Source: Botryllus schlosseri (Eukaryota). From it: a stretch of 64,000 bases of DNA. The notes below the pieces were generated by a model. That model had not been told where the DNA came from, made no database searches, and saw nothing but the letters and a program-made list of their open reading frames with translations. The DNA lies in assembly GCA_051294905.1 (NCBI GenBank), contig CM119383.1, positions 21,514,001 through 21,578,000 of the forward strand, in the 5' to 3' direction. Positions 6,511-37,104 of the stretch are shown here, one piece after another. The translations under genes and the position numbers were made by a program. Numbering within the stretch: the stretch's first letter is position 1; each line of letters opens with the position of its first letter.

Positions 6511-7939
6511 GTTATATCCAGAATGCTACATGAAGCATGACACATAGGTATAATGATGGTGTAAACAGGCCTGAAATCGTGTTTGCAGTGAGAGCATGCC
6601 AGCACTAACAACTCACTTGGGAGTAAATGGAACAATACCAATGTGAAGAAGTTTTCAACTCATCATATTTCTTTCCGCTATTGCTGTTGAGTCTACACGC
6701 ACGGCAAATTCGTGATATTGCCATAAATGCAGATGATACATAGCATCAAAGGGAGTTCTAGTGTATTTGTCTCAGAAGAACAAATACAGCACCGGTCACC
6801 AGATCTTGCATTACAGATATTACAAGTAAGCTACTTCTACATAGGCTCACTTGTGGTGTCATAAAAAACAAGTGCACCGTTTAGAGCAGGTTAATGATGG
6901 TTAATGGAACATCTCTACCTTCTAATGTAATTTCAAATAAAAACTATTTCCATGTGACCGGAGAGTTGACTACCTACGGTCCCTTCTTGACCCTGCCGAC
7001 AACTGGTTCAATATCAGTATCGGATTGGCAATTAGCGGTATAAAAAAAAGGGTAAAATAATATCACCAATTCATGACGTCATAGCCATTATTTCGAAGAT
7101 GGAGAACTATAATCTGTTAGACTGGGAAGATTGATCTATTTCTAATAGCTTACAGGCGTCCAGTTGTAGCCATTCCAGTTTATTACAAGTTCCAACATAG
7201 CAATCGCTGTAACGCTGTGCAAATAAGTGCTCTGAAGTCGTGGAAATGCGCCTTAAGCTAGATGCCATATCTTTTGAATATCAGCTGGATATATCTGGGT
7301 TATCAGTGAAGTTGCTAGTCATCGGTTTTATTGGTATCAGCTCAAAAATCCCATATCAGTCGGATATTAGTCACTAATACGATTCCAAAATCATTGTACC
7401 CCAAGCCCAATGTAGCCAATGCTTACAACCCCCACTTCAGTTGCAATGAGGAATGAACCATTTTTATTCTCACTATCGTCATTGTCTGATAAAATCGATA
7501 CATGACTAACGAAAATCCACAGCCGCTCCAATGAAATAAAACTAAAATCAAGAATTCGTACAAAAATCGGAGCTACGGAAGTGTACATGTTTAAAAAGTA
7601 ATATTCAGCACTGAAAGAACTCGGCAAGTACAATTCACCATAAAAAGGGTTACAACATGCAACCTATTCGATTCGCTAGACTGTAAAACGTCATCTTATA
7701 ATTTCAGTATGAATATCGCACGGTGGCGCAATTTCTTGACAAAACTCAACACTACTATAAAGCAATAAAGAACACTGATATCGACACCGACAAAGACATT
7801 CACCAACAGTGAAATAGGCCTACTGCCTTGCGCCAGAATTTGGTGGGATGGAAAACAGAGACGTAAGACTATGCAGAAAGTTAGCAAGCTCTGCACGAAG
7901 TGTTTTTGAACTATCTTGTTAGTGTGCTAGTTCTGATAC

Positions 7940-8144
7940 CTTCTCCGGTGATATTGAATACTTCTTGGTCTTGTAGTCTGCCGTTGACGAATTTTGTGAT
8001 GCGTGCAATCGATGACTTTGTGGATATGTCGATTTGAAATCTTGCGAAAATGGTGCCATCGTCACGAGGAGATACAACAACGTTCTTCAACGATTCCAAA
8101 TCGACACCATCGCTGTTTGGTATTTCCTCTATGATCAACTCCAA
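7940..8144 (-). CDS. AGRN: Agrin exon, canonical SEA domain C-terminal part (LELIIEEIP...PRDDGTIFARFQIDIS...)
   Basis: tttttcttcag acceptor, gtatca donor, phase 0-1; within ORF 7911..8237; SEA-like pattern at the position expected for agrin. Confidence 0.8.
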
Positions 8145-27614: not shown

Positions 27615-27848
27615 CCATGCAAATATTCGTGAACGTCAAAAAGGATCTGGTAGCACACGAGACATCTTTCACAGCATTCTTGTTGTCATAGAAACGATCG
27701 TTGTTCGCGATTCTGCATCCCAGCGTGACGGGAAGCCGATTTGAATCGCCGATAGCAGAGCAGTCGCAATCGTACAGGAATCCTCCGGATTCGTCTTTCG
27801 ACAGTTTACAACTGGCGCCATAGTCGCATTGCATGCTGCCACAAATTT
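27615..27848 (-). CDS. AGRN: Agrin exon, divergent follistatin domain with 8 cysteines
   Basis: aatttcag acceptor, gtgaga donor, phase 1-1; C-x4-C-x5-C...CDC...C...C...C pattern but no CGSDG. Confidence 0.85.
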
Positions 27849-28684
27849 CTGAAATTAGAGAGGTGAGAGAAAATCTATTAAATCCTAATGATCATCCATG
27901 GTCATCTCTGTTCCAAGCGAAACATAACAAAAGCAAAACAATCATAATGATGATCGTAAGCATGTAGTCAAATTAGATACTTGTGGAAAAAATTGTTGAG
28001 TTAAGTTAATTGTACAATCAACCGACTTACGGACTTATTACGACTTACGGATGTTTGTTCAATGAATGAACTATAGAAAATAAGCTGAGCCTATAAACAA
28101 AATCGCTAACTTCAGTAGATCGCCAAGAAAACATGAACGAACGGGAATATTATTATACAATGTGGGTCGCACTATGTAGCATAAGTCGGTTATCTGCACA
28201 CACAATCTACGCACCCAAAATTATGACCATCCAGTAGTAAACTGTTGTAAAAATACATAAAAATCGATAACGCAGATTCCAATTTACATACGCGCTACAA
28301 TTCAAGACAAACGAATTTTCAAGAGGCCTAGGTTATCGACTATAACATTGTCCAAACTTCATGGACTCGCGAGTCCTTTCAAGGCAATTTACAGGGCCTT
28401 TCTCTTACAAAGCAGCATTTATTCAAATCACAATCACTTAGAGCAATAGAAAGCAATTAGACGTATTAAACTGTCCTTGAATCAATTTTCGATGCAGAAC
28501 CACCAATTACCAAAAATAATAAGTCAAACGTTCCACGTGCAGTACAGTTAGCGAGTTTACATCCTCTACAAGTCAACAGACAGAACAGCAATTATGTTAC
28601 ATGTGTTTCGTGTAATCTTGGTATATTGTTAAGGATTGGACGTTTTCCTACAACAGAATTGAATGATAGACGTCAAAAACAAAC

Positions 28685-28863
28685 CTTCCGTTATGAAATC
28701 ATCTTGAGGATTATGAGCAGGTGCGCGCCTAACGCTCATATCATTGATAACAACGGCGAAGGCTCCATCATCAGGATCGTGTAATCTTTGGTATGCCCAC
28801 GTTGAGTCCTGACCAGGTGTGAAGTCTTTATCAATCGGCTTATCAAGCCAAGATATTCTCGCT
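28685..28863 (-). CDS. AGRN: Agrin exon, extra SEA-like module, part 3 (ARISWLDKPIDKDF...FITE)
   Basis: cttcttggtttag acceptor, GAAG/gtttgt donor, phase 2-1; exactly bridges exon 33531 (phase 2) to exon 27848 (phase 1); inside ORF 28629..28910. Confidence 0.72.
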
Positions 28864-30385
28864 CTAAACCAAGAAGGGCAATAAATATACAAGAAAGATC
28901 CAAGCTTCACTCAGAGTTCGGCGGAATGAAGGCTTCGCATTCGACGAAACAGACTAATCACTTATTTCATTATTCAATACCAGCGTACACATTCCGACAC
29001 GCTGCAAATCCCTGCGATATATAAACTGATGCAAGTGAAGCGGGCGGACGTGAGCAGGTGTAAAGATCCGCAATTTGTACACAAGAATTATAGTATTACA
29101 TGTTGCCACCCGGAAAGCATGACAATGGAAAGCCTTTCGTTGTTAATATGAGCAGAATTTTGAGTGCTTTTATTAATGGCAGAGGAGAAAAGGTGGCCAC
29201 AAAGTCCAGCCGGTGTTTCAAGATCTATGTCTTTGTAGTATACCTACTCGGCACTGGGCAGTGCTGTAATTCTAGCCTATATGAGAAATTCATCGGTTGA
29301 CATATAGAAGGAAGACATGTTTGCGAACAAAAATTTCTACTTACGCAAACACATTTATTCAATTTCCTTTGCAAAATCAGAAGTTAGTCCTAAGTGAATT
29401 TCAATCAGCAGTGCATAATTGATTTTATCAATCGATTCTAGAAATCGACCATCCCTTGAAAACACGAAAAAGTCATTCCTCATAGACGATCATAATCGTC
29501 GCTACAGCACAAAATACGTGAATTCTACCGATATAATGGGCACCCTGTAGGAAATTTAGTATTCGCACCCTAATAAGGAGTTGAATGAGATGGAATAAGT
29601 ATCAATGAATTCATGACAGGCCAACATATTTGATCAGTTTGTAATTGAAAGATATAACATATCATTGACATATAGAAACAAAATCTGTGACAAAATACCA
29701 ATCGCAATTTATACTCCGCTGAAGCTCCACAGTGAAAGTAGGACTCGGGATCCTTTGAACTATAACATACAACGCTCGCGTCGGCTTACATGAGATTCGC
29801 CCAAATCTTGTAAACAAGGAAAACAATAGCGCCATGTGCGGTGTGTATGTAAAGATAATCTTGTTCTCAAATCCGGTGGAATTTGTCACTAGGAAATTGT
29901 CAAGGACGACGTATACACAACAGAACATATTCCGCAATGCCCCAGGCGTATAAACAGAAAATTAATCTCCAAAAACGCCGGTTTACAGCGACAACATGGG
30001 TGCAAAAATCGCGTGTTGTGAAGGTCACCCGTAAAGAGTATATGATAAAACTAAATGAAAGCCATCCTTTTTCCAAGGTTAGATGTGTATTGTGCATAGT
30101 GCATTACCATTGCCGAACTGGCAGAGCGACACACACCAAATTGTATATGTGATTTGTTTTCAATATATGAAACTTGACAATTGACATAGACGACGTGTAG
30201 CCTAAGTAACAAATTACATGTGTTATGTGCCAATTTTCTAGGCATGTGCAATGAATGTTGTATATGAATTCCAATACCTCTCTTCGGCCAAATAATACGC
30301 AGAAGATGCGTGAACACTGAACACATATATACAATGTCCTACAGTGTGCACATAGCTTATACATATATTTAAGCCGAGGTATAAA

Positions 30386-31288
30386 CTGTGTTGGGATGAC
30401 TCGAGTCACTTTTTCGTATGACTTGATTTGACTCGAGTCACTTCGCCAAAATGACTTAATTTGACTTGACTCGGCGTATCAGAAATGTGGATTGACTCGT
30501 GACTCGGAGCAAAATTCACGAGTCAATTTCATCAAGTAATCGGCATCGATAAAAATCACTATATCTTGCATATGGTCGATTTTTTTGCGAAATGCTGGTG
30601 TAACCCGTGAGAGCGACCAATCATTCAATAATCGTGCGTTTTACTGAGCCTCCGTTGTTCTATCACAAATAAATTGACCGGAAACGAAGTGATCGAAACT
30701 TACAGCTTACGCTGTCGTAACCTAGTATAGTAAAGTAAATTAATAGCAAAATGTCTATTTCTGTTCTCTGTTCTTACCTTTAAAAAAATATATTGCTTGA
30801 TTGAAATTGAATTCGAATATACTTTATATAGTCCTCAACCACTGACGCAGGCTCGAATTGTATCATATCAATTTGTAAATGGGCAATGTATTGCATGTTA
30901 TCATTCATTTCTTTATTCTCTATTTTTGCTGTTAGCTATAAACTGAGGCTGTAGGTATATGTGAGCGACGAAGCGCCTTTTTGCCTGCACATTTAACTCT
31001 ATATTCGTTCATTGGTTCAGAATCAATGACCACTCAATCTGCATATCAGACAGCTATTAAAACGCAATGACGTAATCATTCCTAATACTTCAAATAGGCA
31101 ACTTGGCTTGAATTGTGACTTGACTCGTGACTTGACTTGACTTGACTCGACTTGACTCGAGTCACCTCCAAAAATCGAGTGACTTGACTTGACTCGAGTC
31201 ACCTTCGAAAATCGATTGATTTGACTTGACTCAAGTCAAAATGTGCAATGACTCGTGACTCGAAGGTAGTGACTTGATCCCAACACTG
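30386..31288. mobile_element. hAT-type non-autonomous element with GACTT/GACTC micro-repeat arms
   Basis: Termini ctgtgttgggat / atcccaacactg; flanks ggtataaa / gatataaa (7/8); (gactt)n and gactcgagtc arrays near both ends. Confidence 0.82.
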
Positions 31289-33530
31289 GATATAAATATT
31301 AGTTGCTGTCGGGCTCGATAGTACTAGAGTGGGTCACAATAACAAGTGGTTTGATTGCAACACGTTTAAACTTCAAATAAGAAGTAGCCTACACAATACG
31401 ACGTTATATAGAACAAAGTCGAGTATATGCTTGCTATATGGTCAGATTCGGTATTTTCGAGGAAATAGTTTTGAGGTGATGAATTTATCTTCGAACCAAA
31501 TCTGGAAAAAACTCCTTTCGGTAATTCCATGCGGTGTCAATATTTCGATTTTCTCACATTGCGACAATACAATAGATGAGCTGGTCACTGCCATTGCATA
31601 CTTTTCAATTCCTCTAAACGACATAAATCGATTTGCAGCACATGACACAGCAGGGTAAACATATAATTCATGGGCAAATATTTTCTCAGGATTGAAGCGC
31701 TGGAGTTTAATAAGAAATCAAGTTTAGCAGTATTTACTTTGCAACGTCGAAAATTTCACTCTAATCTAGTTAGCGGCGACAGATATTCTTGAGATGAAGG
31801 GGCCCAACGATTGACTTTAATCTTCTGAAAGTCAAGTCAAGTAGAACATAAAACAATGGCAAGTGTCAGCAATGTTTTCTTATGTTGTTATATATCTATG
31901 GAAATAGTCCTCGTGAAAATCAATTCAACAAGGATCAAGGGTCATTGGATAATATAACAGTCTGAAGTGGCCAATTGAAATTGGATTCGACTTATTTGAT
32001 CAATGACCACGTTTCGCTCTGCGTACTGAGTCGTCAGTTGTCAGATTTTGACTGACACATTTTCAACTACTATTCCTACAAAGACGTTAAGCGTTGGCCT
32101 TGAAACATTAGCTTGCAGTCATACTCCACGCCGGATATTCTATATATTATATAGCATACATTACGTATAAATTAAATATATTTCTTGCAGAAGCATGATT
32201 GCCATGATGCGTGAATAATCGTTAAATATGAATGACCAGAGAATAACTGTATCACGAGAGCATACTTGGCAAACGAAACGAAATTAGTATTACTGTGGCA
32301 TGTGGCGAAACTTCGCTATCAACGGGAAACGAGAAAATCCACATATCTATAAGTTCAACAACTGCGGCGCAAAAAATATAGGAAGCTAATTTGATAGGTT
32401 GAAACAGTGTAGTTCTAAGCTATATTGTCGGAAAATATATCCGAATATTCCATAGCGAGAGTTGCATTTTAACCATTTTCACGTCACTAGAATATACATC
32501 AAATAATAACAATATGGTTTTGGGCCATATTTTCGGGAAATATATGTGAATATTCCATGCGAAAATTGCATTTTCACATATTCACATTTACACAAAACAC
32601 ATAAAATAATCTCATTCACGAGTGAGCACGGGCATATGAATCGAAAGAGGATTGCAAATGTCAAAAAATCCATAGATAATATCCGATTCAATGCTACGTC
32701 ATATATGAGCGTAAGCTGTAATTTGGCGTACGCCTGTTAACATTAGTTGCGTCATGGCCATGTACAATTCACAATATATATTTTATGTGCAGGTATAAAA
32801 ACATCGCATCCTTGGCGAACTCCCTAACACAATGGGAGTAATCATTCAAGTTTGCTCAAATGCATGTTTCATTCTACACACCAATTGCGGTGTGGATATG
32901 GATTCCACAAGATATAGTCGCGCAGTAACCTTTCCAGTGTCCATAACGACATCCAACATATATGTAGGAATCATGAATTCGCAGAAATAGTCAAACAGTC
33001 AGCGTTGCTACTACAGTATGTACTACAGCTACTACAGTATGTAGAAGCTGTAACGCAGTGGATTTCCACTCAATTAAAAAAGAAGTGTCAAGTTGTGTGA
33101 GATTATTTCACGGAGTTCGCATGACGATTTCGTACACACAAATGATGCAAACTCATCCCAAAAGTACTTGGTGCTATTCAAAATCGAAAGTGGAAATCAA
33201 AGAAAATTAGATCTAATCACTGTTAAAGTTGAAGTGGAAGCAGTCTTAAAAGTGTAAGTAGTGGTAATAGACATAATCTATACTAGAGGGCATCGGAAAA
33301 CGGTTAATTGGTTACCGACACTGCGAACTCACCAGGAGTGTTAAGATAAGAGTTGTGTAATTTACCAATCTGCACAATATTTCCAATATTTCTTAGCTCA
33401 TTGGCGATTTCGGAATTGAATCTAGATAGGTGAGTTGTCTAATTAGTTAAGTGTGGATTTTCAATGTCGTTCGTTCCAGCAGAAGTTCTAATTGCGCATG
33501 TACAAGGCTTTGTCAAGTTGCGAACATTAC

Positions 33531-33625
33531 CTGTAGACAAAAATGACACTTCCACTTCGCACGTCCTCAATTGTAAAGTCCGTGATCTGCCGCGCGTCGT
33601 CGTCTCTATTCTGCATTTCGAGATG
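33531..33625 (-). CDS. AGRN: Agrin exon, extra SEA-like module, part 2 (HLEMQNRDDDARQITDFTIEDVRSGSVIFVYR)
   Basis: tattttctctccag acceptor, CAG/gtaatg donor, phase 0-2; contains a GSV motif. Confidence 0.78.
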
Positions 33626-33708
33626 CTGGAGAGAAAATAGGCAGGTGCTCAATTCTTTGACGGAGTCCAAGGCTAGTATGTACTGGAAGAACTGGAACTC
33701 ATTGATAC

Positions 33709-33857
33709 CTTCACTACGGCTTGTTTGAAATTGTATTTGAATTCGGAAATCTCCGGCGAATCAGGCTGGCAATCTCCCAGACAACGGTCGTCCGCTAAGA
33801 TACTGGTGCTTCCGCGTATCGTTGTGGATTCTGTCAACGGTGAAATGTGAATTAAGT
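33709..33857 (-). CDS. AGRN: Agrin exon, extra SEA-like module, part 1 (LIHISPLTESTTIRGSTSI...PDSPEISEFKYNFKQAVVK)
   Basis: cttttgcag acceptor, AAG/gtatca donor, phase 1-0; followed by an 83-bp intron. Confidence 0.75.
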
Positions 33858-33925
33858 CTGCAAAAGATTACAAGAATACAGCAAAGGGTTCCACGTTTCG
33901 ATAAGAATTTGAGAATCGATTAGGC

Positions 33926-34251
33926 CAGTAGTTCTTAACCTTTAATAACCTGACGAACCCTTACGCTTATCTGCAATAGTTCGGCGTCTGCTACACAAGA
34001 ATATACCAAATTACGCATACAATAGATTACGAGTGCATATAATGAACTGTGCATCATCAACATCAGTGTTAAAAGAATAAACCAATGAAACATTAAAACA
34101 TGATTTTCACACAAAAATATATTGTGATAAATATTTACTGCAAATCGGCGTGACTTTTGCTGTGTGGGCGATGTTTTGACCTCCAGTAAACCGCTGATAC
34201 CGGCAAATCGAATCCCTGGAGTTTCCGGGAACACCGGTTATGAACCAATAG
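33926..34251. mobile_element. Degenerate hAT-type MITE
   Basis: Termini cagtagttcttaacc / ggttatgaaccaatag; flanks share taggc. Confidence 0.5.
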
Positions 34252-36858: not shown

Positions 36859-37104
36859 TTTTCCCCGACGGACAAGATCCCGCCGATATCTCTACGATGT
36901 CTTTCCCCGATTTGCAAGCATGTCTTTCCAAAGCGCACTTCGACATGTACGTTCTGCCGTCCGAGCCACAGATCATGATGGCGCTTGACGAGGGGCAGGG
37001 AATATCATCGCAGCACTGAGGCTTACCGCTGCTGTCAAGAGAGCATTTCCCCTCGCAGGCGCTAGCGATTGACTGAGTGCTTTCATTGAAAAACGCGCAA
37101 GGTT
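36859..37104 (-). CDS. AGRN: Agrin exon, third follistatin domain (EPCAFF...MICGSDGRTYMSKCALERHAC...GSCP)
   Basis: tctttttcag acceptor, gtaagt donor, phase 1-1; 10 Cys. Confidence 0.92.

What the first reader, a model, noticed from the sequence alone, without database searches (positions are those of the whole stretch)
28685..33857. A second SEA domain with a mucin-type autoproteolysis motif inserted in the agrin follistatin array
Seen: three exons (149+95+179 = 423 nt, 141 codons) splice in frame between FS3 and the degenerate FS, giving ...STTIRGSTSI...PDSPEISEFKYNFKQAVVK-HLEMQ...ITDFTIEDVRSGSVIFVYRARISW.... This follows the SEA strand-helix-strand-GSV-strand pattern. Established: canonical agrin has a single SEA domain, C-terminal to the Ser/Thr region and not known to self-cleave, whereas MUC1-type SEA domains self-cleave at G/SVVV (FRPG/SVVV) and stay non-covalently associated until pulled apart. 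Inference: this agrin could be autoproteolytically split at RSG/SVIF, making a force- or condition-releasable link between its N-terminal anchor (plus FS1-3) and the GAG/LamG signalling body, a protease-independent shedding mechanism I do not know for agrin. Only seven FS domains precede the laminin-EGFs here against eight in vertebrates.
Basis: partly seen in the sequence, partly recalled or inferred. Interest (0 to 1): 0.85.

Follow-up and report, generated by a model that had tools for sequence, protein, structure and literature searches.

The report
Unannotated SEA-like insert in sea-squirt agrin
A sea-squirt agrin gene really does splice a conserved 132-residue extra domain into its follistatin array, and the domain carries the Gly-Ser turn typical of self-cleaving SEA domains, but neither the fold nor any cleavage could be tested here.

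Summary
The three exons are real and lie on the minus strand. RNA contigs from four studies join FS3 to exon A, A to B, B to C, and C to the degenerate FS, all in frame. One correction: exon A starts at 33830, not 33857, so the module is 122+95+179 = 396 nt (132 codons, phase 1-1).

The module is single-copy in this 495 Mb genome. It is conserved with the same exon structure in another tunicate contig (42% identity, as conserved as the flanking FS domains). It is also present in the published Ciona intestinalis agrin, where Banyai et al. 2010 listed residues 431-677 as 'unassigned by Pfam'. Sea-urchin agrin has no such gap. Arg-x-Gly-Ser followed by hydrophobic residues is kept in all three tunicates.

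SEA membership is unproven. Pfam SEA matches neither the separate exons here nor the contiguous Ciona orthologue in 2010. Local profile tests had no power. The spliced protein could not be given to the fold tools. Crude secondary structure gives beta-alpha-beta-beta-alpha-beta with Gly-Ser in the beta2/beta3 turn, which fits a SEA-type fold.

I put a SEA-type fold at about 0.65 and self-cleavage at about 0.35. The region was public but uninterpreted.

The parts
36859..37104 (-). FS3 exon (follistatin/Kazal). Its donor at 36859|gtaagt is spliced to 33830.
   Evidence: Kazal_2 E=6.6e-10. The acceptor context and the loose end ...ISAGSCPSGK in RNA contigs are.
33831..33857 (-).
   Evidence: Contigs of X5, X10 and X14 all end alignment at 33830. 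The orthologous exon in L004 is 122 nt.
33709..33830 (-). Module exon A (122 nt). It holds predicted strand beta1, a conserved Cys-x3-Cys, the D-S-P-E N-cap and most of helix alpha1. It ends in phase 0.
33531..33625 (-). Module exon B (95 nt). It holds the end of alpha1, predicted beta2, the turn and the start of beta3. It ends in phase 2.
   Evidence: Joints 33709|33625 and 33531|28863 in RNA contigs.
33548..33553 (-). The Gly-Ser codons of the R-S-G-S-V-I-F motif, the putative scissile bond.
   Evidence: Position derived. Gly-Ser is invariant in the window, L004 and Ciona.
28685..28863 (-). Module exon C (179 nt). It holds the rest of beta3, a loop, helix alpha2 (WAYQRLH), predicted beta4 and the conserved N-P-x-D-D-F tail. 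It ends in phase 1.
   Evidence: Present in full in 20 runs. Orthologous exon fragments P0001, P0002, P0006 and P0007 are 38-69% identical. It is single-copy in the genome.
27615..27848 (-). Degenerate FS exon (234 nt, phase 1-1) that directly follows the module.
   Evidence: The loose end at 28685 reads ICGSMQCDY. No Pfam hit. It is 41% identical to L004 and shares LPVT-x-x-C with Ciona.
7926..8144 (-). Exon at the canonical agrin SEA position, downstream of the Ser/Thr-rich exons. It resembles the second half of the Ciona agrin SEA and has no Gly-Ser motif.
   Evidence: ORF. Compared by eye with the Ciona SEA in Banyai Fig. S6. No Pfam hit for the exon alone.

Best explanation
The window holds part of a sea-squirt agrin gene. 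Between FS3 and a degenerate FS, tunicate agrin carries a lineage-specific module of 132 residues in three exons, with phase 1-1 boundaries. I think it most likely folds as a divergent SEA-type alpha/beta domain (beta1-alpha1-beta2-turn-beta3-alpha2-beta4). In that reading its tight beta2/beta3 turn carries the invariant Arg-x-Gly-Ser-hydrophobic motif and undergoes strain-driven N-to-O acyl-shift self-cleavage between Gly and Ser, as in MUC1-type SEA domains. The two halves would stay joined through the shared beta-sheet. The laminin-binding N-terminus (NtA-FS1-3) would then be linked only non-covalently, and so mechanically separably, to the proteoglycan and LamG signalling body. Shown here: the exons, their splicing, their conservation, the motif, and the restriction to tunicates. 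Inferred: the fold, the cleavage, and the functional consequence.
For: Splicing of FS3, A, B, C and degenerate FS in RNA contigs of four studies. The module is as conserved as the flanking FS domains: 42% identity against 36-49% outside the cysteines, with identical exon architecture in L004 (122/98/179 nt). The orthologous module sits in the published Ciona agrin at the same place. V-R-x-G-S followed by four hydrophobic residues is kept in three species. A crude propensity and periodicity analysis gives E-H-E-E-H-E with Gly-Ser between strands 2 and 3, similar to a bona fide GSVVV SEA exon of the same genome. Even bona fide SEA exons of this genome score only 15-25 bits against Pfam SEA, below its 26.4-bit cut-off. 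Ciona's accepted agrin SEA scored only E=0.0017. Failure of the HMM is therefore weak evidence against. The strain-driven cleavage mechanism and the retention of the halves through an intact sheet are described in PMC10556640.
Against: No profile evidence. Pfam SEA gives nothing on the three exon pieces even at E<=10, and nothing at the locus in a six-frame scan of the genome. Pfam left the contiguous Ciona orthologue unassigned at E<0.01. A local SEA HMM and hhalign gave no signal, although both profiles were very shallow. There are no paralogous copies and no reciprocal hits to SEA exons. The residue after Ser varies (Val, Ser, Ala), so two of the three species depart from G-S-V/I-V/I. The module is flanked by FS domains rather than by the O-glycosylated stretch usual next to SEA domains. 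No fold model of the whole module and no protein data exist.
Confidence: 0.36

Rival explanations
1. The module has a SEA-type fold but does not cleave itself. It would act as a rigid spacer or a binding surface within the follistatin array, and the Gly-Ser would be kept only because a tight hairpin needs small residues.
For: Same structural indications as the best explanation. The +2 residue is Ser or Ala in two species, departing from the canonical G-S-V/I-V/I. Many SEA domains, including vertebrate agrin's own, are not cleaved (Banyai Fig. S6 shows no Gly-Ser there).
Against: Both Gly and Ser, plus Arg at -3 and the hydrophobic run, are invariant at about 40% overall identity. That is more than a turn alone requires.
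Confidence: 0.28
2. The module is a tunicate-specific alpha/beta domain unrelated to SEA, and the Gly-Ser resemblance is coincidental. Its role would be an unknown interaction within the N-terminal, growth-factor- or matrix-binding half of agrin.
For: Every sequence-based test for SEA failed (Pfam on Ciona). No PDB sequence relative was found, and there was no atlas lead. Its conserved features (Cys-x3-Cys, W-A-Y-x-R-L-H, N-P-x-D-D-F) are not SEA hallmarks.
Against: The predicted order of elements, the length, the S-P-E helix cap and the R-x-G-S-hydrophobic hairpin all fit SEA. Extracellular ferredoxin-like modules are usually SEA-like (my own knowledge).
Confidence: 0.3
3. The module is a decayed pair or remnant of follistatin domains, or an alternatively spliced or artefactual insert of no consequence.
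For: Tunicates have fewer recognisable FS domains than sea urchin (ten) or vertebrates (nine), and the next domain is itself a degenerate FS.
Against: The module has only two cysteines, no FS or Kazal pattern, and predicted long strands and helices. It is conserved as strongly as intact FS domains. It is present in spliced RNA from four studies, and no contig was seen that skips it, although skipping from FS3 to the degenerate FS lay outside the stretch laid.
Confidence: 0.04

Closest known systems
Ciona intestinalis agrin (XP_002123658.1), residues 431-677 'unassigned by Pfam' in Banyai et al. 2010 (PMC2874008, Table S1)
   Same: This is the orthologous module at the same place, after FS3 (Kazal 384-430) and followed by the same degenerate FS. 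It shares R-G-S-x-S-I, Cys-P-G-N-Cys, V-R-Q-G-S-A-I-L-L-F, W-I-Y-D-R-L-Y and N-P-R-D-D-F.
   Different: It is a different species with about 35-45% identity. The paper gave the region no domain name or function, and its consensus procedure did not assign it.
Autoproteolytic SEA domains of the MUC1 type (Pfam PF01390; MUC1 F-R-P-G|S-V-V-V; and, from my own knowledge, matriptase and enteropeptidase G|S-V-I-A)
   Same: About 115-130 residues and extracellular. The predicted order is beta-alpha-beta-beta-alpha-beta, with R-x-G-S followed by hydrophobic residues between strands 2 and 3 and an S-x-E cap before helix 1. The mechanism is described in PMC10556640.
   Different: There is no significant profile match. 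The +2 residue is variable. A Cys-x3-Cys and an N-P-x-D-D-F tail are present that are not typical of SEA. The module is embedded between follistatin domains of a secreted matrix protein, not next to a mucin stalk or a membrane anchor.
Canonical agrin SEA domain (vertebrates; Ciona residues 1292-1401)
   Same: It is in the same protein and would be the same presumed fold class. This gene also has an exon at that position (8144-7926).
   Different: The canonical one lies after the last FS and the Ser/Thr region and has no Gly-Ser at the hairpin (Fig. S6). It shows no detectable sequence similarity to the module.
Protease-mediated release of agrin fragments in vertebrates (neurotrypsin alpha/beta sites, MMPs)
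   Same: It separates the N-terminal anchor from the C-terminal signalling part.
   Different: It is enzyme-dependent, its sites lie elsewhere, and the neurotrypsin sites are absent from invertebrate agrins (PMC2874008). The module would be enzyme-independent and the halves would stay associated.

Membership tests
SEA domain (Pfam PF01390 / SMART SEA) | Significant match to the family profile HMM | tested here: not met
   The exon pieces gave no SEA hit at E<=10. A six-frame PF01390 scan of the whole genome gave ten weak hits, none at the module. Pfam on the contiguous Ciona orthologue left residues 431-677 unassigned at E<0.01. Caveat: the whole spliced module of this genome could not be submitted because it has no reference, and genuine GSVVV SEA exons of this genome also fall below the cut-off.
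SEA domain (Pfam PF01390 / SMART SEA) | Ferredoxin-like beta-alpha-beta-beta-alpha-beta sandwich fold | tested here: inconclusive
   A crude propensity and periodicity call gives E-H-E-E-H-E. AlphaFold2 on single exons had low confidence (pLDDT 63) and showed only the WAYQRLH helix. A whole-module fold could not be run.
Autoproteolytic SEA subclass (MUC1 type) | Gly-Ser followed by hydrophobic residues in the beta2/beta3 hairpin | tested here: met
   The motif is R-S-G-S-V-I-F-V-Y here, R-T-G-S-S-V-L-V-Y in L004 and R-Q-G-S-A-I-L-L-F in Ciona. Its placement in a hairpin is predicted, not shown.
Autoproteolytic SEA subclass (MUC1 type) | Cleavage at Gly|Ser with the fragments staying non-covalently associated | not testable with these tools
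   This needs recombinant protein or proteomics. The exon-piece complex job gave no verdict.
SEA domain (Pfam PF01390 / SMART SEA) | Extracellular context next to heavily O-glycosylated sequence | tested here: not met
   The module is extracellular in a mosaic protein, but it is flanked directly by FS3 and a degenerate FS. The Ser/Thr-rich exons lie far downstream at 13206-12814.
Agrin | FS array, two laminin-EGF, FS, Ser/Thr region, LamG domains in order | tested here: met
   Kazal hits at six exons, EGF_laminin twice, Kazal, a Ser/Thr-rich ORF and Laminin_G on the minus strand in that order. The layout is collinear with Ciona agrin.

The most novel reading that the evidence does not exclude
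Tunicate agrin contains a built-in, enzyme-independent self-cleaving SEA-type joint between its laminin anchor (NtA-FS1-3) and the rest of the molecule. The mature protein would then be a two-piece, force-separable complex. This would be a mechanical fuse or release mechanism for a synaptic matrix organiser, with no counterpart in vertebrate agrin, where release depends on neurotrypsin and MMPs.
Probability: 0.33. Interest if true: 0.75.

Novelty: new variant of a known kind. Interest (0 to 1): 0.5.

Why it matters
Agrin links the laminin network, through its N-terminus, to receptors such as Lrp4/MuSK and dystroglycan, through its C-terminus. How the two ends are uncoupled governs its signalling. 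In vertebrates, dedicated proteases do this, and their sites are missing in invertebrates (PMC2874008). Ciona agrin has recently been shown to act in neuromuscular junction development (PMC12445529), so the system is experimentally tractable. If the tunicate insert is a self-cleaving SEA-type module, it would be a different, autonomous solution to the same uncoupling problem. It would also be the first SEA-type joint placed inside a follistatin array. Even if it is not, a 130-residue domain has sat unassigned in a well-studied protein of a model chordate since 2010. It now has exact exon boundaries, RNA support and a testable hypothesis.

Tried and rejected
- Pfam on the three exon translations gave no SEA hit, only a chance Cadherin_3 hit at E=0.03.
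- PF01390 against the whole genome in six frames gave no hit at the module.
- An exhaustive representative search with exon C found four true exon fragments. The multi-stretch hits were bacterial Kelch, cadherin, Big and FAST repeat proteins, which I reject as chance.
- Three word-index protein searches (FS3 ORF, exon C alignment, degenerate-FS alignment) looked for transcript-derived proteins that would give a referable spliced module. They returned only genomic exon fragments.
- A metagenome contig scan found nothing.
- PDB sequence searches with exon B, the exon C profile and a local SEA exon found nothing significant.
- The ESM atlas with exon C gave noise-level scores.
- In the sandbox, a SEA HMM built from this genome's own SEA exons was run against the spliced module with 1000 shuffles, and hhalign was run with a reversed control. 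Neither gave signal, but Neff was about 2, so the tests have almost no power.
- A complex prediction of the three exon-encoded pieces gave no verdict (score 0.01, pLDDT about 30, alignments not used). It is evidence neither way.
- AlphaFold2 on exon B and exon C alone had low confidence.
- Genome searches with the exon A and exon B alignments returned only self matches.
- The intron-position comparison with genuine SEA exons showed phase 0 in helix 1 and phase 2 in strand 3 in both, but the offsets differ by 2-4 codons depending on the anchor, so it is suggestive only.
- The apparent 'GSHFIFY' upstream of exon C in L005 is rejected. It is the polypyrimidine tract and acceptor read in frame.
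- Steps left out: Pfam, AlphaFold and Foldseek on the whole spliced module, and on the Ciona segment printed in the paper. These strings have no reference and long sequences may not be typed.
Full report
**Observation.** The gene runs on the minus strand. The three exons have canonical AG/GT boundaries. I laid Logan contigs of four runs from four different studies on 28300-34200. The introns are uncovered apart from a repeat at about 30270-31450, so these runs behave as RNA. The joint 33531|28863 (skipping 4667 nt, GT..AG on the coding strand) is present in all four runs. The joint between exons A and B is present in three runs. It was reported as 33627 to 33714 with 'TTG' between, which is exactly the predicted 33709|33625 junction carrying two SNPs at 33712-33713 (Val to Ala). 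The loose end at 28685 reads the start of the next exon (ICGSMQCDY), which lies at 27848 behind a good acceptor. At the 5' side every contig stops at 33830, not 33857. The loose end there matches the end of the FS3 exon (genome 36888-36859, one mismatch, followed by gtaagt). The true first exon is therefore 33830-33709 (122 nt), and the module is 396 nt or 132 codons, still phase 1-1.

**Context.** Pfam on the neighbouring minus-strand ORFs gives three Kazal/FS exons upstream (about 44480, 39708 and 37104), a non-matching Cys-rich exon after the module (the 'degenerate FS', 27848-27615), three more Kazal domains, two laminin-EGF domains and another Kazal. Further downstream come Ser/Thr-rich exons and LamG. 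This is an agrin architecture. An exon at 8144-7926 resembles the second half of the Ciona agrin SEA domain and has no Gly-Ser.

**Relatives and clade.** An exhaustive search of 1.8 billion representatives with exon C found only four true relatives. All are short ORF read-throughs of the orthologous exon in other genomes, at 38-69% identity. The multi-stretch hits were bacterial repeat proteins. One relative lies on a 4 kb contig with about 60-nt introns (L004). That contig carries FS1, FS2, FS3, three module exons of 122/98/179 nt, and the degenerate FS in the same order. Another relative comes from a marine biofilm metagenome.

The decisive link came from the supplement of Banyai et al. 2010 (PMC2874008). 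The printed Ciona intestinalis agrin sequence contains the same module directly after FS3 and before the same degenerate FS. The paper lists residues 431-677, lying between Kazal 384-430 and Kazal 678-722, as unassigned by Pfam. Sea-urchin agrin in the same table has ten uninterrupted FS domains and no such gap. The insert therefore looks tunicate-specific. Earlier follow-up notes on this genome also call it a sea squirt. The three exons are single-copy in the 495 Mb assembly.

**Is it a domain under selection?** Between the window and L004 the module is 42% identical. The flanking FS domains are 36-49% identical once invariant cysteines are excluded. Conserved features are R-G-S-x-S-I, D-D-x-Cys-x-G-x-Cys, S-P-E/Q, D-F-x-I-x-E/D-V-R-x-G-S, W-A-Y/F-x-R-L-H and N/D-P-x-D-D-F. 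The hairpin motif reads V-R-S-G-S-V-I-F-V-Y here, V-R-T-G-S-S-V-L-V-Y in L004 and V-R-Q-G-S-A-I-L-L-F in Ciona.

**Is it SEA?** By profile, no. Pfam gives nothing on the separate exons. The genome-wide six-frame PF01390 scan does not touch the locus. Pfam in 2010 did not assign the contiguous Ciona orthologue. A SEA HMM and hhalign built from this genome's own SEA exons gave no signal, but those profiles are too shallow to mean much. Two facts put this in perspective. Genuine single-exon SEA domains of this genome with a G-S-V-V-V motif score only 19-25 bits, below Pfam's cut-off of 26.4. Ciona's accepted agrin SEA scored only E=0.0017.

A crude propensity and hydrophobic-periodicity call on the two-species alignment gives strand-helix-strand-strand-helix-strand, with Gly-Ser between strands 2 and 3. 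That is the SEA order. Intron phases are similar to those in genuine SEA exons (phase 0 inside helix 1, phase 2 in strand 3), but the positions are not demonstrably identical.

The decisive tests are Pfam or HHpred and AlphaFold plus Foldseek on the whole spliced module. Attempts to find a transcript-derived database protein to use as a reference all failed. Substitutes were uninformative: a complex job on the three exon pieces, and AlphaFold2 on single exons.

**Mechanism and odds.** SEA autoproteolysis is driven by strain in a short beta-hairpin, and the products stay together through the undisrupted sheet (PMC10556640). The module has the sequence requisites in all three species. I put a SEA-type fold at about 0.65. 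Given that fold, I put cleavage at a little over one half. That yields about 0.36 for a self-cleaving SEA-type joint, 0.28 for an uncleaved SEA-type module, 0.30 for an unrelated alpha/beta domain, and a few percent for a decayed FS or an inconsequential insert. If it cleaves, NtA-FS1-3 would be held to the rest of agrin only non-covalently.

**Novelty.** The sequence of the orthologous region has been public since 2010 as an unassigned stretch. I found no paper that names or interprets it. Membership in the SEA family fails the profile test, so I do not file it as a SEA member. I describe it as a tunicate variant of agrin carrying a SEA-like insert. Ciona agrin is now known to function at the neuromuscular junction (PMC12445529), which makes the cleavage hypothesis directly testable.

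Noticed in passing
window 30380-31294 (inside the exon B-C intron): A foldback, MITE-like element of about 915 bp. It has terminal inverted repeats (30380-30397 / 31277-31294) and many internal GACTCGAGTC palindromes. Its pieces reach very high summed depth in all four RNA runs, so the family is abundant and transcribed.
   Followed up: partly
window 8144-7926 (-): An exon at the canonical agrin SEA position resembles the second half of the Ciona agrin SEA (Banyai Fig. S6). It has no Gly-Ser at the hairpin, and Pfam does not recognise the exon on its own.
   Followed up: partly
G000 C1:41.33-41.43 Mb (L008, L010, L013) and C10:4.65 Mb (L009): A small family of near-identical single-exon SEA domains with a canonical Q-G-S-V-V-V motif. 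Three are clustered within 100 kb. All score below Pfam's SEA cut-off.
   Followed up: no
window 19787-19599 (-): A short Cys motif (F-G-C-C-D-D-D-I-T-P-A-K...G-C-P) just before the laminin-EGF exons. The same G-C-C-x-D-x-x-T-x-A...G-C-P motif appears at that position in the Ciona, bee, beetle and sea-urchin agrins printed in PMC2874008. There is no Pfam hit.
   Followed up: no
window 33712-33713 and 33450-33531: RNA contigs of three studies carry two adjacent SNPs relative to the assembly (Val to Ala at the end of exon A). One X14 contig runs on from exon B into the intron, which indicates unspliced or retained-intron RNA.
   Followed up: no
window 27848-27615 (-): The 'degenerate FS' keeps its N-terminal Cys pattern and a conserved L-P-V-T-x-x-C. 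It is conserved at 41% to L004 and 67% to another relative (P0011). It gets no Kazal hit, so it is a conserved divergent domain rather than a decaying one.
   Followed up: partly
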